Shown: one piece after another, positions 38,480 to 58,414 of the stretch | Layout of the letters: every line of letters starts with the position of its first letter | Position numbering within the stretch: position 1 is the stretch's first letter | Sequence record: PQ471516.1 | DNA: 64,000 nt | Reading direction: 5' to 3' (one strand) | The notes under the pieces: generated by a model | What the model saw: the letters and a program-made list of their open reading frames with translations, nothing else | What the model was told of the DNA's origin: nothing | The model's database searches: none | Translations under genes and position numbers: made by a program

Positions 38480-38643
<164 letters not shown>

Positions 38644-38658
38644 ATAAAGGTTTATTTT

Positions 38659-39048
38659 ATGCATAGTACTGATGTGATATTACACGGAGTGAGATGTACA
38701 AATTTACTTTTGGTATCATATATACCAGCACGTGTAAATCGTCAAGACATGGTATATCCAACTTCTAATACAGCAGTGCTAAAAGATGATACACAACTCG
38801 CCTACCGTTATACATTCGCTTATTCACCATATAGTGCTTTGCATGTTATCTTCAAAGAAGATGGTACAGTACAAGTGAAATATGTTGATAATGATAAGTT
38901 TAACGATGCTATCATCTCCAACTTCACTATACATGATACTGAAGAAGAGTTATTCATGAAAAGTACTATACAAAATGATTTCGGTATAGGCTCTAAAGAA
39001 ATTGAAACATTTCGCTTGATCTGGGATGAGTATTTTGGTACAATTTAG
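38659..39048 (+). CDS. EExFFQxS-motif family protein
   Basis: DTEEELFMKSTIQND; start moved to ATG 38659 (the track start lies in tRNA genes). Confidence 0.75.
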   Translation: MHSTDVILHGVRCTNLLLVSYIPARVNRQDMVYPTSNTAVLKDDTQLAYRYTFAYSPYSALHVIFKEDGTVQVKYVDNDKFNDAIISNFTIHDTEEELFMKSTIQNDFGIGSKEIETFRLIWDEYFGTI

Positions 39049-39080
39049 TACTGATAAATATTAATGAAAGGTATAGAGAA

Positions 39081-39278
39081 ATGACTAAATCCGAACTTCT
39101 GGCTTTATTAGAAAATTATCCAGATGATGCATGTATTGAAGTTGTGCATACTGCACAACATTTTGACATTGAAGATGTTGTACGATACAATGACAAAGGT
39201 GTGATGATTATGGAACTATGCATCGGTGCTTTGAAAACTGTACCAGAATCAACTAAACGAAACTCCCTAAAGGAATAA
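39081..39278 (+). CDS. hypothetical protein
   Basis: MTKSELLALLENYPDD... Confidence 0.75.
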   Translation: MTKSELLALLENYPDDACIEVVHTAQHFDIEDVVRYNDKGVMIMELCIGALKTVPESTKRNSLKE

Positions 39279-39284
39279 AATATT

Positions 39285-39518
39285 ATGGAAACTAATACAA
39301 TTTTAGATGTAGTAAACAGTGTTAATACTGGTGACTTTGTTCACATTCTTTTATCCAACATCCGTGTTAAGGGTATTGTTGAAAGTGTTGATTCTGAAGT
39401 TCTAACTATTGTTGAAGTTGATCCATACGACAATAATAAATCAGTTCGTCTGTGCATTGATGTTTCCAAAATTGTAGCACTCGGTACAGAAATTATTACT
39501 GAAGAAACTAATCTATAA
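39285..39518 (+). CDS. small beta-barrel (Sm/SH3-like pattern) protein
   Basis: VHILL..IRVKGIVESVDSEVLTI...LCIDVSKIVAL. Confidence 0.5.
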   Translation: METNTILDVVNSVNTGDFVHILLSNIRVKGIVESVDSEVLTIVEVDPYDNNKSVRLCIDVSKIVALGTEIITEETNL

Positions 39519-39527
39519 AACGACAAT

Positions 39528-39606
<79 letters not shown>

Positions 39607-39660
39607 CTTAAGAGGATTTAATATGTTTAAAGATGAACGTCCAGATTTGTAAAATAATCA

Positions 39661-39689
39661 TTGACTAAATAATCCAGTACTGATAAAAT
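39661..39689 (+). promoter_or_regulatory. sigma70 promoter with AGTACT in the spacer
   Basis: TTGACT-17 nt-TAAAAT. Confidence 0.75.
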
Positions 39690-39695
39690 AAATTT

Positions 39696-39785
<90 letters not shown>

Positions 39786-39789
39786 ATAT

Positions 39790-39871
<82 letters not shown>

Positions 39872-39892
39872 ATTTTAATTTAAGGTGTATCC

Positions 39893-40057
39893 ATGACGCA
39901 TGAAGAATGGATGAATGATATTAATTTTAGATATTCGGGTATCGGTAGTTGGCGAAAATATCATTGGGAAATTATATCAGACCCAGCAGAATACGATAAA
40001 CTTATAAACCATGAAGTATATCCGTGGTTCTTTATTGAAATAATGGTACGAATATGA
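39893..40057 (+). CDS. MTHEEW-family microprotein 8 (54 aa)
   Basis: MTHEEWMNDINFRYSGIGSW... Confidence 0.8.
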   Translation: MTHEEWMNDINFRYSGIGSWRKYHWEIISDPAEYDKLINHEVYPWFFIEIMVRI

Positions 40058-40218
40058 CGCATGAAGAATGGATGAATGATATTAATTTTAGATATTCGGG
40101 TTTCGGTAAATGGCTAAAGTATCATTGGGAATTTATTACTGATCCTCAAATGTACGATAAACTTATAAATGATCAAGCATATGAAATTTACTTATTTGAA
40201 ATACTGGTCAGAACATGA
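40054..40218 (+). CDS. MTHEEW-family microprotein 9 (54 aa)
   Basis: MTHEEWMNDINFRYSGFGKW...; ATGA coupled. Confidence 0.8.
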   Translation: MTHEEWMNDINFRYSGFGKWLKYHWEFITDPQMYDKLINDQAYEIYLFEILVRT

Positions 40219-40379
40219 CGCATGAAGAATGGATGAGAAAACAAAAGCTAACATGGAATCCTTATTGTTACCAGTTAGACCCAAGAATGTGGGATGTGAT
40301 ACGTATTAAATGTATGTACAAATCATTTCTTGGTGATATAATGGATGTTGAAGTACTGATGAATTTAGTACATCGATAA
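40215..40379 (+). CDS. MTHEEW-family microprotein 10 (54 aa)
   Basis: MTHEEWMRKQKLTW...; ATGA coupled. Confidence 0.8.
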   Translation: MTHEEWMRKQKLTWNPYCYQLDPRMWDVIRIKCMYKSFLGDIMDVEVLMNLVHR

Positions 40380-40409
40380 TAAAAATCTTATTTAAATGGG
40401 ATTGATATC

Positions 40410-41043
<634 letters not shown>

Positions 41044-41049
41044 CAAATC

Positions 41050-41354
41050 GGGCCATTAGCTCACGGTGGTTAGAGCAAACGACTCATCGACAATGGTGAC
41101 TTTCATCAGTAATGGTGATTGAAAAACTGGATGAATTCAGGGAAATCTTAACACGTAATGGTGATGACAATCCTGAGCCAAGCCCAATAAGCGTATTGGG
41201 AAGGTGCAGAGACTAGATGGTACAGTACGTTCTTACTGTGTAATACATCATTAGCGTCCGGCATCCCTATGGGATGATGATATAGTCCGTACTATTGTGA
41301 AAACTATAGATTATACGAATCGTTAGGTACTGTGTTCGACTCACAGATGGCTCA
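41050..41354 (+). tRNA. trnI: intron-containing tRNA-Ile2(CAU): exons 41050-41087 and 41318-41354
   Basis: Spliced cloverleaf GGGCCAT/ATGGCTC, GCTC/GAGC, AACGA-CTCATAA-TCGTT, CTGTG-TTCGACT-CACAG; C4-G69 and C5-G68 as in Ile2. Confidence 0.9.
41088..41317 (+). mobile_element. group I self-splicing intron (230 nt, no ORF)
   Basis: P AATTCAGGGAAA, Q AATCCTGAGC, R GTGCAGAGACTAGA, S ATGATATAGTCC; P1 U-G at the 5' splice site; terminal G41317. Confidence 0.92.
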
Positions 41355-41373
41355 CAAACTTTGAAATAAAATA

Positions 41374-42078
41374 ATGAAAATAAAATTAGAATATCCATAC
41401 AGTAATGATTGGAAGAATGGGTATATACAGATAAACCCTGAAGGTAGAAGAACTGTAATACTTTATAATTCTCCAACTGATAGAAGCAGTACTCAATATG
41501 CTAGATATCTATTAGCAGTAAAAGAAGGTAGATATTTAACTGAGTCTGAAGAAGCAGACCACATTGATAATGATTTCACAAATGATGATTTGTCTAATTT
41601 ACAAATACTTCATGTTGATGAACATCGTTATAAAACACATAAGAATGGAGTACAAGCACGATATGATTCATTTGTATGTGCTTGTTGTAATACGGAATTT
41701 TCCCGTAGACATACTAAAGTGAAATCATATACAAAATATTGTAGTGTTGAGTGTTCACAAAAAATGGTCAAGCCTCCGTCAAATACAAAGGGTGGTGAAA
41801 CATCAGTTGATTATGAAAAGGTAAAAGAATATATTAACCAAGGTTTGTTAGATACTGAAATTGCTAAAATAATGAATATTAGCAAAGGTTCCGTACTAAA
41901 TTATAGAACCAAAAATAATATACCATCAAAACATTTTGAGAAAGTAAGGATATTAGAAGATAATATTACTGAGATCAGAAAACGTTTGACAGATGGTGAG
42001 AAGAAGGTTAAGATATATGAAAGTTATGGTGTTTCGAAGAATGTATTTGCTAGGTTTTTAAAACGCCATAATATGTAA
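41374..42078 (+). CDS. free-standing HNH homing endonuclease
   Basis: ADHIDNDFTNDDLSNLQIL..H; CxxC...YCSxxC zinc module; two C-terminal HTH-like repeats. Confidence 0.85.
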   Translation: MKIKLEYPYSNDWKNGYIQINPEGRRTVILYNSPTDRSSTQYARYLLAVKEGRYLTESEEADHIDNDFTNDDLSNLQILHVDEHRYKTHKNGVQARYDSFVCACCNTEFSRRHTKVKSYTKYCSVECSQKMVKPPSNTKGGETSVDYEKVKEYINQGLLDTEIAKIMNISKGSVLNYRTKNNIPSKHFEKVRILEDNITEIRKRLTDGEKKVKIYESYGVSKNVFARFLKRHNM

Positions 42079-42085
42079 TAAATAA

Positions 42086-42159
42086 GACTCTGTAGCACAA
42101 TTCGGTGGTGCGAACGACTGTTAATCGTTAGGTTGGGGATTCGAGTTCCTCCAGAGTCG
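42086..42159 (+). tRNA. trnN: tRNA-Asn(GUU)
   Basis: GACTCTG/CAGAGTC, AACGA-CTGTTAA-TCGTT, G73. Confidence 0.92.
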
Positions 42160-42165
42160 CAAATC

Positions 42166-42294
42166 ATTGGACACATTAATCTTCGATGGTAATGCTGGTT
42201 AATATCTTACGGCTGTAAAATGCAATACATTACATATTGCTTCAGGTACAGAGATATAAAGATTAATTAATAAGGTATCCTTATTTTGTCCAAT
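42166..42294 (+). ncRNA. putative pseudoknotted structured RNA
   Basis: Six perfect helices plus a 6-bp pseudoknot (see findings). Confidence 0.65.
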
Positions 42295-42323
42295 CCTTAA
42301 TAACTAGAAATGGTGGAACAAAA

Positions 42324-42770
42324 ATGAAAGGTGTTTCAATTTTTTACGATTACCATGAACAAGGTTTACCACATCAGATTGCTGGAATCTATTCTACGTC
42401 TGATAAAACAGAAGAAGAGATGCGTACTGAATTATTGTCTCTAATCGGTTCTCAAAGTTTCCATGAACGTGATCAACCAATTTTCATTAACCACACACAT
42501 TTGTATGCAAAAAGTTTGCTAGGTGAAGAACTTGATAAAAAGGTGGAATACACGTTAAAACAGTTCTTCCCATTTGCACTTGATTTAGTTGGCTTCCAGT
42601 CATCCGAATTCAAGTTCATGTACTATGATGGTGATGCATATGAGTTTATTTGGAACAATCGTTATCATAAACAATTGCACCAACATCGTTTAGATCTTCA
42701 ACACGAAGCGGCTGAAGCATATAAAGCAAAACGAGAAGCACAGAGGCGTGAAGGTAAAGTACAGAAATGA
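42324..42770 (+). CDS. hypothetical protein
   Basis: ORF with GGTGG SD. Confidence 0.75.
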   Translation: MKGVSIFYDYHEQGLPHQIAGIYSTSDKTEEEMRTELLSLIGSQSFHERDQPIFINHTHLYAKSLLGEELDKKVEYTLKQFFPFALDLVGFQSSEFKFMYYDGDAYEFIWNNRYHKQLHQHRLDLQHEAAEAYKAKREAQRREGKVQK

Positions 42771-43069
42771 TAGAATCTATCTTATGTGTACTGTTGCCAA
42801 TTTTAGTAGTTGCTTTGATATGTCTTTATTATGGTTACAGTACTGTAATTGATAAAAAGCAAGTTTACGTCATTACATTCAGTACTACGCATATTGAGTT
42901 TGGTAATGTACACCCTGGTATCAGTTATATTGCATATCGTTGTAAGTACTTCCATAAGTTCAAATCTTATGATATGATCTATTACTGTGATGAATCCAAC
43001 GTGAATCGTTATATTGACATAAACGATGAATCGAAAAAATCGTTTTATAGTTTTAAAGAATTAAAATAA
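42767..43069 (+). CDS. membrane-anchored hypothetical protein
   Basis: N-terminal TM. Confidence 0.7.
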   Translation: MIESILCVLLPILVVALICLYYGYSTVIDKKQVYVITFSTTHIEFGNVHPGISYIAYRCKYFHKFKSYDMIYYCDESNVNRYIDINDESKKSFYSFKELK

Positions 43070-43081
43070 ATGGAGACGGAT

Positions 43082-43330
<249 letters not shown>

Positions 43331-43409
43331 TTTTTAATTGACACAACTTTGAATGAGGTGTATTATGTTCCAAGAAGAAAACTGGGGTTTTTAACATAAA
43401 GGGGAATGT

Positions 43410-43517
<108 letters not shown>

Positions 43518-43600
43518 AAATGATAAATAATACAGTAAGATGACCTCCCCTCAATACGAAAGAGTATGGAGACTTGTTGGTTATCTTACTTCTTAAATTA

Positions 43601-43673
43601 GCCTTCTTAACTCAGTTGGTAGAGTAATCGCCTTGTAAGCGATAAGTCATCCGTTCAAGTCGGATAGAGGGCA
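43601..43673 (+). tRNA. trnT: tRNA-Thr(UGU) copy 1
   Basis: GCCTTCT/AGAGGGC, ATCGC-CTTGTAA-GCGAT. Confidence 0.92.
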
Positions 43674-43675
43674 CA

Positions 43676-43757
<82 letters not shown>

Positions 43758-53925: not shown

Positions 53926-54369
53926 ATGTATTCAAAAAATAAAACATTGTTTATTGTTTATATTATTATTATCATTGATGCAATTAGTAATTACCTCACA
54001 CTCAATAACATTGAAACATTTATAAATCCGATATGGTTCTGTATCAATCTTGGAGCACTTGCAGTATTCTCAGCGATTGCATTACTGGGATTGATTGCAG
54101 TGTATCTGATTGGTTTAAACGAAAATGACAGAGTTGATTTTGTTAAGGAATACGGAACAAAATCATTATCAAAATTCGTTTGGGTTCTTCCATTATGTTT
54201 GCTTATAGTGTATGATGTTCAAATGCATTTATATGAATCAGCCGTAATTTTAACACCTATCATGCTTATATATAACGCTTTCGTTAATGAGCACAGGTTA
54301 GCCATTAAAGAACACTTTATACGAATGGCTAAGATGGGAACCACTCAATTGAATGAACAAGAGGATTGA
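53926..54369 (+). CDS. multi-TM membrane protein (probable paralog of previous)
   Basis: About 4 TM, similar layout. Confidence 0.7.
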   Translation: MYSKNKTLFIVYIIIIIDAISNYLTLNNIETFINPIWFCINLGALAVFSAIALLGLIAVYLIGLNENDRVDFVKEYGTKSLSKFVWVLPLCLLIVYDVQMHLYESAVILTPIMLIYNAFVNEHRLAIKEHFIRMAKMGTTQLNEQED

Positions 54370-54373
54370 ACTA

Positions 54374-54625
54374 ATGAACGTTGAACGTGTCCAAGAATTA
54401 GCAGCAGCATTACAGGCTAACGAAAACCAATGTCAAGAACTTCGTGATACTATTAAAGTCGAGTACGCACGCTTACAAGGTCTTCTCCAGGAATCTAACT
54501 GGGTAGTAACCAAAGGTATCGAAGCAATCTATAAAGATATTGAATCCCTTTTCAACAAGAAGTCTAAGTTTGAATCCGATTCTTACAACAAACGCAAAGA
54601 ACTAAATTCAGTACTAGGTGTCTAA
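54374..54625 (+). CDS. coiled-coil hypothetical protein
   Basis: ATG 54374 with GAGGA SD. Confidence 0.7.
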   Translation: MNVERVQELAAALQANENQCQELRDTIKVEYARLQGLLQESNWVVTKGIEAIYKDIESLFNKKSKFESDSYNKRKELNSVLGV

Positions 54626-55904: not shown

Positions 55905-56867
55905 TTGAAAAAGCTAGATCTAAATGCAATTGCTGATGAAGTACTGGATGAATGTTTTGCTAGTGAAGAAGTCAACGTATTAGAGGCAATTGATGCCGTT
56001 GAAGAAGAACATGATGACCACAAGTTCGAGAAGCCTAACACTGGTATCAGTTTAACTCGTCCTAAAGGTGTAACGAATGAAATGCTCATCCAGGAAGTAC
56101 GTGATGGCATTAACGTTGAAAAGAACATTGACCTTCTAGTACGTTACAACTACCCAATGATTGTTAGTACTGCTCGTAAATGTACATGTTTCATCCCATT
56201 TGAAGATAAGATTTCATATGGTGTTGAAGGTTTAATGCGAGCGATTCATACATTTGATCCTACTAAGAACGTTAAGTTCATTACCTATGCAACATCAACT
56301 GTGTATATGACAATCTATAACGAAAGTGCAGACGCTAACTACTTAGTGCACTTCCCACGTTATATGAGTGTTAACAACATTTATGTGAAACGTTGTGTAG
56401 AAGCGTACCAAAAGAAATATGGTAGGTTCCCAACTCCAGAGATGGTCGCTGAAGAGACTGGTATTGAGATTCAACACGTTAAGAATTGTCTAACCTACAC
56501 CAATACTTATATGGCATTGGATATGAAATTGAGTACTGATTCAGAAAGTACCTTGTCTGACATTGTTACTACAGTTGATCCTGATTACAACTTAGGTGCA
56601 GAAACTATCAGTATTCCACTGGTACAAAGTATTGCAGATATGATGCATAATCTATCTGAAAAAGACCGTGAGTTGATTGAACGTGTACATGGTATTGGTT
56701 CTTGTGCTGAACCAGAAACGCTACGAGAAATCATTGAGAGCGGTTTTGAAGATGAGAAGGGTAAAGTCATTACTGCTCGTTCTTCCTTGCACCGTAAGTA
56801 CTCTGATGCAATGGAACGCCTACGTAAGATGGTTAAGTCCAGAGGTTATGAGTTCGAAGATTTTTAA
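55905..56867 (+). CDS. sigma70-family RNA polymerase sigma factor
   Basis: Region 2 (D.I..G..GL.RAI..FDP.K..KF.TYA), region 3 PTPE.VA, region 4 TL.EI. Confidence 0.9.
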   Translation: MKKLDLNAIADEVLDECFASEEVNVLEAIDAVEEEHDDHKFEKPNTGISLTRPKGVTNEMLIQEVRDGINVEKNIDLLVRYNYPMIVSTARKCTCFIPFEDKISYGVEGLMRAIHTFDPTKNVKFITYATSTVYMTIYNESADANYLVHFPRYMSVNNIYVKRCVEAYQKKYGRFPTPEMVAEETGIEIQHVKNCLTYTNTYMALDMKLSTDSESTLSDIVTTVDPDYNLGAETISIPLVQSIADMMHNLSEKDRELIERVHGIGSCAEPETLREIIESGFEDEKGKVITARSSLHRKYSDAMERLRKMVKSRGYEFEDF

Positions 56868-56871
56868 GATT

Positions 56872-56931
56872 AAAGGGTTGACTACGGTCAACCCTTTTTT
56901 TATGGGACAAATTCGTAAATGGTGATACAAT
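56872..56931 (+). promoter_or_regulatory. terminator plus promoter of the putative ncRNA
   Basis: AAAGGGTTGAC/GTCAACCCTTT plus T; GGGACA-16 nt-TACAAT with extended -10. Confidence 0.65.
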
Positions 56932-56937
56932 GATCTA

Positions 56938-57400
56938 TGCACAACCACAATGACAGTACTTGTACTGATAATCTTCCCTAATTCACTTGAAAACGTAAAG
57001 GATAGATGAGCTTTTCATTGTAGCGAACAGCAAAAGAAACCCGTTAGATGTGGGCATAGTTTGAACCCCTCACGGCAATGCGGCTGTATAAAGAACCACG
57101 TTAGGATGGCTGGTGGTTCCTCGATAGACATATAAGGATAACACCTTACGAATTATCTAAGGGAGAGTTATCAGATTTTGTACAATATAGTTGCGTCCAA
57201 AATTTGAGTACTCACATTAAGTATTTGATTGCATAGATACTTAATGAAGATACACTATGTTTAAAAGTGTAGACCGTCATATGAAACTGAAGTAGAGAGA
57301 ACCAGGATGACCCGCTTTCGTGCTCTTTAAGAGTAATCTTCAATGCAATAGCTCTGATACCATCAGCGTCAAATTCCCCTCGGTGTGGGGGGGGGAAGAA
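56938..57400 (+). ncRNA. putative large structured ncRNA (~460 nt)
   Basis: No ORF; at least 10 helices (see findings). Confidence 0.6.
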
Positions 57401-57437
57401 AAATCACCTCAACAAATCCCGTCAATATTAAAAGTCC

Positions 57438-57466
57438 TTGACAGTTATTATACATTCGCGTAAGAT
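57438..57466 (+). promoter_or_regulatory. sigma70 promoter
   Basis: TTGACA-17 nt-TAAGAT. Confidence 0.7.
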
Positions 57467-57529
57467 ACGTAGTATCAGAAGCGAACAGACATCTCGAAGA
57501 GATGGATGATTAACATTAAGGAACATCTA

Positions 57530-57739: not shown

Positions 57740-57821
57740 TAGTTGACACGTAAGAAGTTCTAGAGTATAATTTCTACATTGAGTACTGAACTAAATCATT
57801 AATTAATCAAGAGGGTTTATC

Positions 57822-58009: not shown

Positions 58010-58297
58010 ATGTTTATTCCTAATAATTCTAAAATTGGAACACAAGTACAACTTCTAGAAGATGTAAGTACTTGCAGTGGCACTTTCACTAAAGGTCACA
58101 TCTTAACTATCACAGGTGAAACCGAGCGTGGTTATGATTTGGAAGATGCTGATGGTAATCGTATCTTAGAAGCAGGGTTTAGTCGTTTTGTTGAAGTGGA
58201 TAGTACTGACCAGAAAGAAACAGAAGGTCATTGTTTTGATTACCAAGAAGTTAACTCAAAATGTATCTGTGGTGAAATTTATAGTAAATGGGATTGA
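58010..58297 (+). CDS. hypothetical protein
   Basis: GAGG SD. Confidence 0.7.
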   Translation: MFIPNNSKIGTQVQLLEDVSTCSGTFTKGHILTITGETERGYDLEDADGNRILEAGFSRFVEVDSTDQKETEGHCFDYQEVNSKCICGEIYSKWD

Positions 58298-58414
58298 CAT
58301 AGTATAGAAATACTATATAATGTTTATATCAAAGGGAATGCAGTGAAAGGAAAGACAGCATAATCGTACTCGTCACTGCGTTTCCACCCTTTTAAATTAA
58401 ATGAGGAATTAATT

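What the first reader, a model, noticed from the sequence alone, without database searches (positions are those of the whole stretch)
56938..57400. Large (~460 nt) ornate ncRNA candidate with its own promoter
Seen: an ORF-free unit between a terminator/promoter (56872-56931) and the next promoter (57438). Helices: CTGATAA/TTATCAG with TCCCT/AGGGA and AATTC/GAATT closing a ~210-nt domain; GAACCAC/GTGGTTC; TAAGG/CCTTA; ATTTTG/CAAAAT; CATTAAGTAT/ATACTTAATG; TGAAGAT/ATCTTCA; TACACT/AGTGTA; GTCAT/ATGAC; CTGAT/ATCAG; TTCCCCTC paired to a G9 run. A possible long-range pair joins loop ATTGCA (57228-57233) and TGCAAT (57344-57349). I see no group I/II, RNase P or tmRNA signatures. Established: large phage ncRNAs (GOLLD, ROOL) exist with unknown roles. 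Inference: a new large RNA class, possibly linked to the upstream sigma factor (6S-like or scaffold).
Basis: partly seen in the sequence, partly recalled or inferred. Interest (0 to 1): 0.75.

Follow-up and report, generated by a model that had tools for sequence, protein, structure and literature searches.

The report
New large structured RNA of jumbo phages
The flagged stretch is a real gene for a roughly 490-base, intricately folded non-coding RNA of a family I could not find described, present in several copies in every Rak2-like jumbo phage and occasionally in mobile islands of enterobacterial chromosomes; what it does is unknown.

Summary
Window 56939-57430 (+) is an ORF-free transcription unit with its own promoter. 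The window is Escherichia phage Turkey5 (Asteriusvirus), which has four dispersed copies.

Homologues occur 2-5 times per genome in all 72 Rak2-like jumbo-phage records, and once each in integrase-bearing islands of E. coli, Serratia, Enterobacter, Buttiauxella and Silvania.

On 51 distinct copies, 89 proposed pairs are 94% paired, against 33-42% in slid controls. The covariation score is 0.55 against 0.10 or less. On 17 held-out copies the figures are 87% and 0.46.

The fold has about 15 helices and four long-range pairings. G.U outnumbers A.C 191 to 14, so the + strand RNA is what is selected.

There is no match in Rfam (4227 families) or ARAGORN, and no paper describing it was found. No specific tie to the sigma factor and no 6S-like features were found.

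It is most likely a trans-acting folded RNA (scaffold, RNP or ribozyme), descriptively like GOLLD/ROOL. An origin-primer role is the main rival.

The parts
56872..56897 (+). Intrinsic terminator of the upstream sigma-factor gene. It marks the 5' boundary and is not part of the RNA.
   Evidence: 11-bp stem followed by a T run.
56904..56931 (+). Promoter of the RNA gene: GGGACA, 16 nt, TG-extended -10 (TGaTACAAT). The start site is inferred at about 56938.
   Evidence: Found by the scan. A TGnTATAAT-type extended -10 lies upstream of 46 of 51 copies against 4% of shuffles, preceded by GRGACA or TGAAAC/TGGAAC.
56939..57430 (+). The whole conserved RNA unit (copy 'A' of phage Turkey5).
   Evidence: nhmmer envelope 56939-57447, E = 1.5e-112, and the only copy in the window. 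Aligned with 50 other copies.
56947..57024 (+). 5' pseudoknot. H1 (56947-53 with 57015-21) pairs the 5' end with the loop of hairpin H1b (57010-12 with 57022-24). It encloses variable hairpin H2 (56954-67) and hairpin H3 (56978-88 with 56998-57005, loop GAAAAYGUA).
   Evidence: H1b 100% paired with 3 pair types. H3 87-97% paired. Outer H1 pairs 91% paired. H2 is too variable in length to score on the alignment.
57027..57087 (+). H4 (57027-31 with 57083-87) enclosing H5 (57041-44 with 57072-75) and hairpin H6 (57047-71). Contains the near-invariant block CACGGCAAUGCGGC.
   Evidence: H4 99-100% paired with double changes at 3-4 of 5 pairs. H5 97-100% paired. H6 is replaced by a longer insert in some copies.
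57078..57131 (+). Tertiary pairing PK3: 57078-80 (AUG) with 57129-31 (CAU).
   Evidence: G80-C129 changes to A-U in 11 copies. 97-100% paired.
57093..57158 (+). Hairpin H7 (57093-99 with 57113-19). Its loop (57104-07) pairs with 57155-58 (PK2). The region encloses hairpin H8 (57133-37 with 57144-48) and the invariant GAUAGACAUAUAAG.
   Evidence: H7 has 7 of 7 pairs with double changes. PK2 is 79-83% paired with double changes at 3 of 4 pairs. H8 is 88-95% paired.
57158..57165 (+). Near-invariant UAAGGGAG, unpaired in the model.
   Evidence: AAGGGA is identical in all 51 copies; the flanking U and G vary in a few copies.
57165..57213 (+). Helix Hx (57165-67 with 57211-13) carrying an optional ~30-nt module (57175-57205: AUUUUG-UACAAUAUAGUUGCGUC-CAAAAU).
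   Evidence: Hx 98% paired with 3-5 pair types per pair. The module is missing in some copies and sits on helix Hf in others.
57215..57246 (+). Long hairpin H9. Its loop 57228-34 (AUUGCAU) is the 5' strand of the long-range contact.
   Evidence: 12 of 12 pairs have double changes; 93-94% paired.
57343..57349 (+). 3' strand (AUGCAAU) of the long-range (kissing) contact with 57228-34.
   Evidence: 99.4% paired, with double changes at 7 of 7 pairs in 51 copies. 98.4% paired in 17 held-out copies.
57251..57271 (+). Hairpin H10 (UACAC/GUGUA).
   Evidence: 92% paired with 5 of 5 pairs showing double changes. It scores low only because the window row carries an 8-nt insert there.
57276..57342 (+). 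Core of the 3' domain. A three-way junction of Hd (57288-92 with 57338-42), He (57295-99 with 57315-19) and Hf (57322-26 with 57330-34). An H-type pseudoknot, PKc (57276-80 with 57307-11, in the loop of He), crosses it. Contains invariant GACCGU and ACCCGC.
   Evidence: PKc 100%, Hd 97-99.6% and He 100% paired, each with several compensatory changes.
57362..57372 (+). Direct repeat R1 (AUCAGCGUCAA).
   Evidence: Changes in parallel with R2 within each molecule.
57374..57397 (+). C-run/G-run hairpin (UUCCCCUC ... GGGGGGAA within the G9 run).
   Evidence: Present in all copies. Many U.G pairs, which points to selection on the + strand RNA.
57416..57425 (+). Direct repeat R2 (AUCCCGUCAA), the last conserved block.
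   Evidence: The motif is not otherwise enriched in the window.

Best explanation
Shown. This is one of four dispersed gene copies in phage Turkey5 for a non-coding RNA of about 490 nt. It is transcribed on the + strand from its own promoter. The RNA is selected for a compact two-domain fold of about 15 helices held together by four long-range pairings.

Shown. The family is present in all Rak2-like jumbo phages and has been exchanged with integrase-bearing islands of Enterobacterales.

Inferred. It works as a folded RNA in trans. The several copies would supply dosage. The many invariant unpaired blocks would form a binding or active surface. Examples are CACGGCAAUGCGGC, GAUAGACAUAUAAG, UAAGGGAG, GACCGU and AACCCGC.

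Inferred. No protein gene travels with it, so it probably acts alone or on something common to enterobacterial cells and these phages.

My most likely specific guess, at about 0.25, is a self-contained RNA particle or RNP scaffold of the GOLLD/ROOL kind. The 7-bp loop contact might then be intra- or inter-molecular. A ribozyme is the next guess. The biological role is not established.
For: Structure:
- 94.0% of 4389 cells are paired, against 33-42% when partners are slid.
- The covariation score is 0.551 against 0.096 or less.
- 902 cells have changes on both sides, against 129 or fewer in slid controls. 0 of 500 shuffles reach the observed values on those measures.
- On 17 copies not used to derive the structure, 86.9% are paired against 34-41%, and covariation is 0.458 against 0.095 or less.
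- Nearly all of the top mutual-information pairs fall in the model.

Strand and molecule: G.U 191 against A.C 14 in supported helices.

Own transcription unit:
- A conserved TG-extended -10 lies upstream of 46 of 51 copies, against 4% of shuffles.
- Copy C of the same genome sits on the + strand between minus-strand genes. It has its own predicted promoter and terminator (the same layout in GAP32).

Not coding: the short ORFs are broken in paralogues.

Multi-copy and widespread:
- 72 phage records with 2-5 places each.
- All 51 IMG/VR pattern hits lie on contigs that are known Rak2-like genomes, jumbo-sized contigs or their fragments (those listed were confirmed by nhmmer).
- 72 of 82 metagenome loci are confirmed.

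No dedicated partner: the neighbours differ among the four phage contexts and three island types.

Exchange: the E. coli island copy nests inside an Eneladusvirus clade with 96/96 support.
Against: - No transcript data exist for any Rak2-like phage, so expression, ends and abundance are all inferred.
- Action in trans is an inference from copy number and the lack of a fixed neighbour.
- Dispersed copies at syntenic sites would equally fit a cis-acting element such as an origin.
- In C/D-type copies a terminator-like hairpin lies inside the conserved unit, upstream of the conserved C/G hairpin and R2. A simple single-transcript picture does not explain this.
- The parallel co-variation of the two direct repeats has no explanation in this model.
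- The structure was chosen on the same kind of alignment that scores it, although the held-out test reduces that concern.
Confidence: 0.6

Rival explanations
1. Replication-origin primer RNA acting in cis. Each copy would be an origin. The transcript from the phage promoter would fold and then form a persistent RNA-DNA hybrid that primes leading-strand synthesis. The models are T4 oriF/oriG and ColE1 RNA II. Islands carrying a copy would borrow the phage replisome.
For: - There are 4-5 dispersed copies at syntenic positions in T4-related phages of about 350 kb.
- The copies are driven by the TGAAAC/GRGACA plus extended -10 promoter class. In CBB this class clusters upstream of DNA-synthesis genes (PMC5259590).
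- A conserved G run follows a C run near the 3' end.
- Single copies sit in integrative islands, one of them with iteron-like repeats nearby.
- From my own knowledge, T4 oriF and oriG combine a middle-mode promoter with a transcript that forms an R-loop.
Against: - Priming would not need about 15 covarying helices and four tertiary pairings spread over 490 nt.
- The U.G pairs in the C/G hairpin show that it folds as RNA rather than staying hybridised.
- Cumulative GC skew shows no inflection at the element. This is weak evidence, because skew in these phages follows transcription.
Confidence: 0.15
2. Self-processing ribozyme or mobile RNA element. The conserved core would be catalytic. The two identical direct repeats R1 and R2 would be its two processing sites, read by one internal guide.
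For: - Size, pseudoknots and many invariant unpaired nucleotides are typical of ribozymes.
- R1 and R2 must stay identical within each molecule, with at least four parallel changes.
- The element has spread among phages and islands without a partner gene.
Against: - No covarying guide complementary to R1/R2 was found.
- No match to any ribozyme family in Rfam, although the group I model does find the true intron at 40996-41309 in the same window.
- Copies are syntenic across genera, so there is little sign of recent mobility within phages.
Confidence: 0.1
3. Counter-defence or defence RNA. The phage would make it to sequester or mimic a host immune component. Islands would carry it as a decoy, sensor or counter-measure of their own.
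For: - Island copies sit beside integrases. In E. coli the copy is in an island with DuOB, DUF488-N3 and mSLOG-DUF4326 genes, which I take from my own knowledge to be conflict-system domains.
- The island copy keeps the phage-type promoter.
- Transfer between phage and island has been repeated.
Against: - This is purely contextual. No known defence protein is consistently adjacent.
- It is rare in E. coli, at 2 of 5426 complete genomes.
- It describes a role rather than a mechanism and overlaps the best explanation.
Confidence: 0.1
4. 6S-like RNA that binds RNA polymerase or the phage sigma factor.
For: Copy A lies directly behind a sigma-factor gene here and in RaK2.
Against: - The other three copies are elsewhere, and the island copies have no sigma gene in the fetched stretches.
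- No 6S model hit at E <= 10.
- The architecture is not an extended hairpin with a central bubble.
Confidence: 0.04
5. Cis-regulatory leader for the downstream genes, acting as an antiterminator or attenuator.
For: Copies A, B and D point the same way as the downstream genes. Terminator-like hairpins occur at the edges.
Against: - Copy C is convergent with its downstream genes in Turkey5 and GAP32.
- A separate promoter follows the element here.
- The downstream genes are unrelated among copies.
Confidence: 0.02

Closest known systems
GOLLD (RF01998) and ROOL (RF03087) large ornate RNAs
   Same: Several hundred nucleotides long, with many covarying helices, long-range loop contacts and conserved unpaired blocks. 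No ORF. Carried by phages and mobile elements. Function unknown. In GOLLD and ROOL the assembly is held together by intermolecular contacts seen by cryo-EM (PMC12286853).
   Different: No sequence or structure homology (no Rfam hit). This RNA is found in virulent Rak2-like jumbo phages of Enterobacterales and relatives, in 2-5 paralogous copies per genome, not next to tRNA genes. It carries a tail with two co-varying direct repeats. Oligomerisation is untested.
lncRNAs of jumbo phage PA5oct (ncRNA001-004; PMC7318152)
   Same: A related jumbo phage has four ORF-free transcribed regions of 236-619 nt. Two of them each reach about 5% of phage reads. Their number and size resemble this family.
   Different: ncRNA002 shows no similarity to the family profile. 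The other three were not tested. No conserved structure has been reported for them.
Origin transcripts: T4 oriF/oriG RNA and ColE1 RNA II
   Same: A promoter-driven, non-coding transcript of a few hundred nucleotides, with several copies per T4-type genome. RNA II needs a defined fold and a G-rich/C-rich interaction (my own knowledge).
   Different: Those RNAs are not known to have a conserved multi-pseudoknot tertiary fold. No origin activity has been shown here, and there is no GC-skew signal.
6S RNA
   Same: A non-coding RNA, here lying next to a sigma-factor gene.
   Different: About 180 nt, a single bubbled hairpin and one copy per genome. No model match.
Group I introns of T4-like phages
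   Same: A structured RNA of a few hundred nucleotides with pseudoknots, present in multiple copies in T4-type phages. One true intron lies in this window at 40996-41309.
   Different: No exons: the flanks are a terminator and a promoter. No RF00028 hit even at E <= 10. The R/S-like sequence I noticed lies in an optional module that is absent from some copies.

Membership tests
Large ornate structured ncRNA (descriptive kind) | Longer than 400 nt, with no conserved ORF. | tested here: met
   The conserved unit is about 490 nt. The short ORFs are broken in paralogues.
Large ornate structured ncRNA (descriptive kind) | Many helices kept by compensatory changes, plus conserved unpaired nucleotides. 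| tested here: met
   73 of 89 pairs have changes on both sides and 94% of cells are paired. The held-out set gives 87%. 65 columns are invariant.
ROOL / GOLLD | Match to the family covariance model. | tested here: not met
   No hit at gathering score or at E <= 10 in the window. No hit at E <= 1 in seven divergent copies.
ROOL / GOLLD | Homo-oligomeric RNA-only assembly. | not testable with these tools
   Needs size-exclusion chromatography, native gels or cryo-EM of transcripts.
6S RNA | Match to 6S models, and a long hairpin with a central open-promoter-like bubble. | tested here: not met
   No Rfam hit. The covariation-supported fold is multi-domain and pseudoknotted.
6S RNA | Binds the RNA polymerase holoenzyme. 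| not testable with these tools
   Needs pull-down or gel shift.
Group I intron | Match to RF00028, and flanking exons that are joined. | tested here: not met
   RF00028 finds the intron at 40996-41309 (95 bits) but nothing here. The flanks are a terminator and promoters.
RNase P RNA / tmRNA | Match to the Rfam models or to ARAGORN. | tested here: not met
   A short resemblance to the RNase P CR-V/P4 region that I recalled fails in 13 copies, where G57080 becomes A opposite an unchanged C.
Origin primer RNA (T4 oriF/G, ColE1 RNA II type) | Promoter plus a non-coding transcript at several genome sites. | tested here: met
Origin primer RNA (T4 oriF/G, ColE1 RNA II type) | Replication starts there, with a persistent RNA-DNA hybrid. 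| tested here: inconclusive
   No GC-skew inflection, but skew is uninformative in these phages. Needs origin mapping.
PA5oct lncRNAs | Sequence homology. | tested here: not met
   nhmmer run without filters finds nothing in ncRNA002. The other three were not fetched.

The most novel reading that the evidence does not exclude
A new class of functional RNA machine carried by jumbo phages and mobile islands. It would be either a new ribozyme, with the two co-varying repeats as substrates read by one guide, or a self-assembling RNA particle. Phages would use it during takeover of the host, and islands would have captured it for conflict between phage and host.
Probability: 0.3. Interest if true: 0.95.

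Novelty: new variant of a known kind. Interest (0 to 1): 0.8.

Why it matters
Few bacterial or phage RNAs of this size and complexity are known. Those whose functions have been solved turned out to be ribozymes, guide RNAs or unexpected RNA-only assemblies.

This family has unusually clean comparative support, with about 15 helices and four long-range pairings. It also has a tractable host: Asteriusvirus phages grow on laboratory E. coli (the phage Sharanji record lists K-12 MG1655 as host).

It comes with natural experiments: 2-5 paralogues per genome, an optional module that sits on different helices, and copies captured by bacterial islands.

It also means that about 650-bp "empty" gaps in 72 deposited jumbo-phage genomes are in fact genes. 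Several records annotate spurious hypothetical proteins across them.

Tried and rejected
- **Single-sequence folding.** Not informative: z = -1.4 on the + strand and -2.6 on the - strand.
- **Rfam and ARAGORN.** Rfam at gathering score and at permissive E-values on the window, and at permissive E-values on seven divergent copies. Only terminator-like noise outside the element. ARAGORN found nothing.
- **Group I intron idea.** I noticed R/S-like sequence, but it lies in a module that some copies lack.
- **RNase P P4/CR-V-like pairing** (AA-U-GCGG with CCGCUU). Mostly invariant, and contradicted by G-to-A at 57080 in 13 copies. That base instead covaries with C57129.
- **Hammerhead-like CAGAUGAG.** The A varies to U in some copies.
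- **CsrA-type GGA motifs and the anti-Shine-Dalgarno-like AUCACCUC.** Neither is conserved across copies.
- **Small ORFs,** including AUG after the G run and a mini-ORF in the module. Frames and starts are not conserved.
- **boxA-like UGCUCUUUAA at 57321-30.** It is simply this copy's version of the variable hairpin Hf.
- **A third strand complementary to R1/R2.** None covaries. The motif is not a general genomic signal.
- **Homology between proteins next to the island copy and those next to phage copy B.** None. PHROGs and Pfam on island neighbours show no shared family.
- **IMG/VR contig L112 as a possible satellite.** It is a fragment of a T4-like phage.
- **PA5oct ncRNA002.** Not homologous.
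- **GC skew.** No inflection.
- **Literature.** No description of this RNA, and its conserved blocks appear in no held paper.
- **Covariance model.** I did not build one. The unit exceeds the 400-column limit, and nhmmer already separated true from chance matches cleanly.
Full report
**Where the window comes from**

The region is 100% identical to Escherichia phage Turkey5 (PQ471516.1, 351 kb, Asteriusvirus, a Rak2-like jumbo phage). Window position equals record position minus 248000.

The finding lies in a 640-nt gap. Upstream are the sigma-factor gene (55905-56867) and its terminator (56872-56897). Downstream is a small ORF that starts at 57506/57530.

**Checking the observation**

The gap has only three short ORFs of 38-47 aa. 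None survives in the paralogues, where they carry stops and frameshifts.

The scan finds a TG-extended -10 promoter at 56904-56931 and the next promoter at 57438-57466.

Folding the single sequence does not beat shuffles. The z-score is -1.43 on the + strand and -2.61 on the - strand.

**The element is a multi-copy family**

blastn against 50,697 phage records finds the region only in Rak2-like jumbo phages. Their hosts are Escherichia, Salmonella, Klebsiella, Erwinia, Yersinia, Pectobacterium, Cronobacter, Serratia and Xanthomonas. There are 61-72 records, depending on which paralogue is used as the query. Most have 4-5 places per record; the RaK2/K64-1 group has 2.

Every copy examined sits in an ORF-free gap of about 650-700 nt.

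Turkey5 has four copies:

| Copy | Record position | Context |
|---|---|---|
| A | 304,939-305,447 (this window) | behind the sigma-factor gene |
| B | about 53,994-54,534 | before a gene cluster that holds a DNA methyltransferase in related phages |
| D | about 108,778-109,352 | among hypothetical genes |
| C | about 192,059-192,578 | after the gp47/gp46/EndoVII genes |

Copy C is on the + strand between minus-strand genes. It has its own predicted promoter (TG plus TATAAT) and an intrinsic terminator. GAP32 has the same layout. The element is therefore an independent transcription unit and not a leader.

**Promoter**

A TGnTATAAT-type extended -10 lies 30-70 nt upstream of the first helix in 46 of 51 distinct copies. 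In shuffled flanks it occurs in 4%.

About 17 nt further upstream lies GRGACA (Asteriusvirus and the Kae01 group) or TGAAAC/TGGAAC (Mimasvirus and Eneladusvirus). The latter is the "divergent RpoD-like" promoter described for phage CBB, where it clusters upstream of DNA-synthesis genes (PMC5259590).

**Structure**

I collected 51 distinct full-length copies and aligned them. I first scanned all column pairs for stacked, compatible, variable pairs. I then scored an explicit model.

It gave 84.3% paired cells against about 40% when partners are slid.

After removing what failed and adding two contacts found by mutual information, the model has 89 pairs in 17 helices:
- 94.0% of cells are paired, against 33-42% in slid controls.
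- The covariation score is 0.551, against 0.096 or less.
- 902 cells have changes on both sides, against 129 or fewer in slid controls.
- No shuffle of 500 reaches the observed values on four of five measures, and 1 of 500 on the fifth.

That model was derived from the same sequences that scored it. I therefore tested it on 17 copies from metagenomes and bacterial genomes. These have no long megablast match of 92% identity or more to any training copy. Result: 86.9% paired against 34-41%, and covariation 0.458 against 0.095 or less. Two helices score low there only because the window row is shifted in that alignment.

**The fold, in window coordinates**

The 5' domain:
- H1 (56947-53 with 57015-21) pairs the 5' end with the loop of H1b (57010-12 with 57022-24), which makes a pseudoknot.
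- H2 (56954-67) is a variable hairpin.
- H3 is 56978-88 with 56998-57005.
- H4 (57027-31 with 57083-87) encloses H5 (57041-44 with 57072-75) and H6.
- H7 is 57093-99 with 57113-19.
- H8 is 57133-37 with 57144-48.
- Two tertiary pairings tie the domain together: 57078-80 with 57129-31, and the H7 loop 57104-07 with 57155-58.

The hinge:
- Hx (57165-67 with 57211-13) carries an optional module.

The 3' domain:
- H9 is 57215-26 with 57235-46.
- The H9 loop 57228-34 pairs with 57343-49.
- H10 is 57251-55 with 57267-71.
- A three-way junction is formed by Hd (57288-92 with 57338-42), He (57295-99 with 57315-19) and Hf (57322-26 with 57330-34).
- The loop of He (57307-11) pairs back to 57276-80 (PKc).

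It is 99.4% paired, with double changes at all seven pairs and at least seven different complementary sequence pairs.

In the supported helices G.U occurs 191 times and A.C 14 times. Selection therefore acts on the + strand RNA, and not on duplex DNA or the opposite strand.

Between the helices lie blocks that are invariant or nearly so in all copies: GAAACCCGU, CACGGCAAUGCGGC, GAUAGACAUAUAAG, UAAGGGAG, GACCGU, AUAGNGAGAA and AACCCGC.

Supported:
- GAACCAC/GTGGTTC
- TAAGG/CCTTA
- CATTAAGTAT/ATACTTAATG
- TACAC/GTGTA
- GTCAT/ATGAC
- the C-run/G-run hairpin
- the long-range pair.

Partly supported:
- ATTTTG/CAAAAT, at 77%, in the optional module.

Not conserved:
- CTGATAA/TTATCAG, 45%
- AATTC/GAATT, 44%
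- TCCCT/AGGGA
- TGAAGAT/ATCTTCA, 37%; its 3' strand pairs with 57288-92 instead
- CTGAT/ATCAG, 30%.

The proposed closed "210-nt domain" therefore does not exist as drawn.

**Peculiar features that I cannot explain**

1. *Co-varying direct repeats.* The tail holds two direct repeats that flank the C/G hairpin. R1 is 57362-72 (AUCAGCGUCAA) and R2 is 57416-25 (AUCCCGUCAA). They change in parallel:
   - U/U in 39 copies or C/C in 12 at one position, with none mixed.
   - A/A in 18 or G/G in 32 at another position, with one mixed.
   - CUUCAAG in both repeats in RaK2.

   They also differ between paralogues of one genome. The coupling is therefore within the molecule. I found no complementary third strand, and the motif is not a general genomic signal.
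2. *Internal terminator-like hairpin.* C/D-type copies carry a terminator-like hairpin with a U run between R1 and the C/G hairpin. The downstream part is nevertheless conserved and shows RNA-type U.G pairs.
3. *A module that sits on different helices.* A ~30-nt module (GUACAAUAUAGNUNCGUCCAAAAUUUG) sits on Hx in most copies. It is missing in some. In others it sits on the tip of Hf, or on both helices. Large ribozymes show the same behaviour in their peripheral elements (my own knowledge).
4. *Concerted evolution?* Asteriusvirus paralogues cluster together in the tree although their positions are syntenic with other genera. This suggests concerted evolution.

**Distribution beyond phages**

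I scanned for a pattern from the 3' core (GACCGT..ATAR..GAA..ACCCGC):
- IMG/VR: 51 loci, all on contigs that are known Rak2-like genomes, jumbo-sized contigs or their fragments (those listed were confirmed by nhmmer).
- Metagenomes: 82 loci, of which 72 are confirmed by the family profile.
- One genome per bacterial species: 25 loci, about the number expected by chance. Eight of them are true full-length copies.

Seven of the eight are in Enterobacterales assemblies. They are the Serratia fonticola chromosome, Serratia sp. 2723, Enterobacter chinensis, Silvania hatchlandensis, strain RIT714, a Buttiauxella MAG and an Enterobacteriaceae MAG. The eighth is a 2.8-kb contig binned as Clostridium that is about 93-95% identical to the Buttiauxella and RIT714 loci.

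Two of 5426 complete E. coli genomes also carry a copy.

The contexts are mobile:
- In S. fonticola the copy lies at the edge of an insert with a large serine recombinase and two ParB-like genes, next to rof and tilS.
- In Buttiauxella it lies between a tyrosine integrase and a CI-type repressor.
- In E. coli LR-29-1 it lies in an island of about 10 kb next to ffs. That island has an integrase, DuOB, DUF488-N3 and mSLOG-DUF4326 genes and a resolvase.

No protein family is shared by these contexts or by the phage contexts.

In the tree the E. coli island copy nests within an Eneladusvirus clade (96/96 support). The other enterobacterial copies group with Xanthomonas phage XaC1 copies and one phage fragment. 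The Serratia copies form their own branch. There has therefore been repeated exchange between phages and islands.

**What it is not**

- Rfam 15 (4227 families) gives nothing here at gathering score or at E <= 10. It gives nothing at E <= 1 in seven divergent copies. It does find a group I intron and eight tRNAs elsewhere in the window.
- ARAGORN finds nothing.
- Resemblances I recalled to RNase P, group I introns, the hammerhead, boxA and CsrA sites all failed against the alignment (see the field on things tried and rejected).
- The four RNA-seq-defined lncRNAs of the related phage PA5oct are a suggestive parallel (PMC7318152). However, ncRNA002 is not homologous.
- I found no paper that describes this RNA or contains its conserved blocks.

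**How it most likely works**

Shown: it is an RNA gene with its own promoter. The + strand fold is under strong selection. It is multi-copy, and it moves between genomes without a partner gene.

Inferred:
- It acts in trans as a folded particle.
- The several copies provide dosage.
- The invariant unpaired blocks form a binding or catalytic surface.
- Its target is something common to enterobacterial cells or to these phages.

The closest known things in kind are GOLLD and ROOL, whose assemblies are held together by intermolecular contacts (PMC12286853). Whether the 7-bp contact here is intra- or inter-molecular is open.

The main rival is an origin-primer RNA. That would explain the dispersed syntenic copies, the promoter class, the G run and capture by islands. 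It would not explain a 490-nt multi-pseudoknot fold. The GC skew is flat across the element, which is weak evidence.

A self-processing ribozyme that uses R1 and R2 as twin sites is attractive because of the parallel co-variation, but no guide was found.

**Verdict**

This is a real and well-supported RNA family that I could not find described. It is of high interest and its function is open.

Noticed in passing
window 40996-41309 (+): Group I intron (Rfam RF00028, 95 bits, full-length model) inside the tRNA gene cluster at 38480-43753, which holds eight tRNA hits. Its host gene was not examined.
   Followed up: no
window 57743-57771 and 58294-58321 (+): Two perfect sigma-70 consensus promoters (TTGACA, 16-17 nt, TATAAT; 12 of 12) just downstream, in a run of very small ORFs. 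This looks like an early, host-polymerase-read region.
   Followed up: no
upstream of the RNA copies, e.g. window 56904-56931; L251:4020-4047: A phage-specific promoter class: GRGACA or TGAAAC/TGGAAC about 17 nt before a TG-extended -10. It is present at 46 of 51 RNA copies. The E. coli island copy keeps it, so that copy could be switched on by an infecting phage.
   Followed up: partly
window 57362-57372 and 57416-57425: Two direct repeats that change in parallel within each molecule, at four or more positions across the family. No complementary partner was found.
   Followed up: partly
L249 (E. coli LR-29-1, NZ_AP027515.1, 3470260-3488515): An island of about 10 kb next to ffs. It carries the RNA, a split integrase, DuOB, DUF488-N3 and mSLOG-DUF4326 genes and a resolvase. 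ATCGATCGTT-type repeats lie several hundred nt (about 800) downstream of the RNA.
   Followed up: partly
L002:2404-2500; L004:1397-1470; L006:1423-1490 (type B copies): In type B copies the promoter is followed at once by a terminator-like hairpin with a U run, before the first helix of the RNA. This could be a 5' protective hairpin or an attenuator.
   Followed up: no
many phage records, e.g. OR699181.1, PV611058.1, PP886230.1: Several deposited genomes annotate three to five 'hypothetical proteins' across these RNA genes. These are almost certainly false gene calls.
   Followed up: no
L104 and L105 (RaK2, NC_019526.1 about 279.7-280.2 kb and 191.3-191.8 kb): The two RaK2 copies have a shortened, divergent 5' domain but near-identical 3' halves. 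This suggests recent conversion between them.
   Followed up: no
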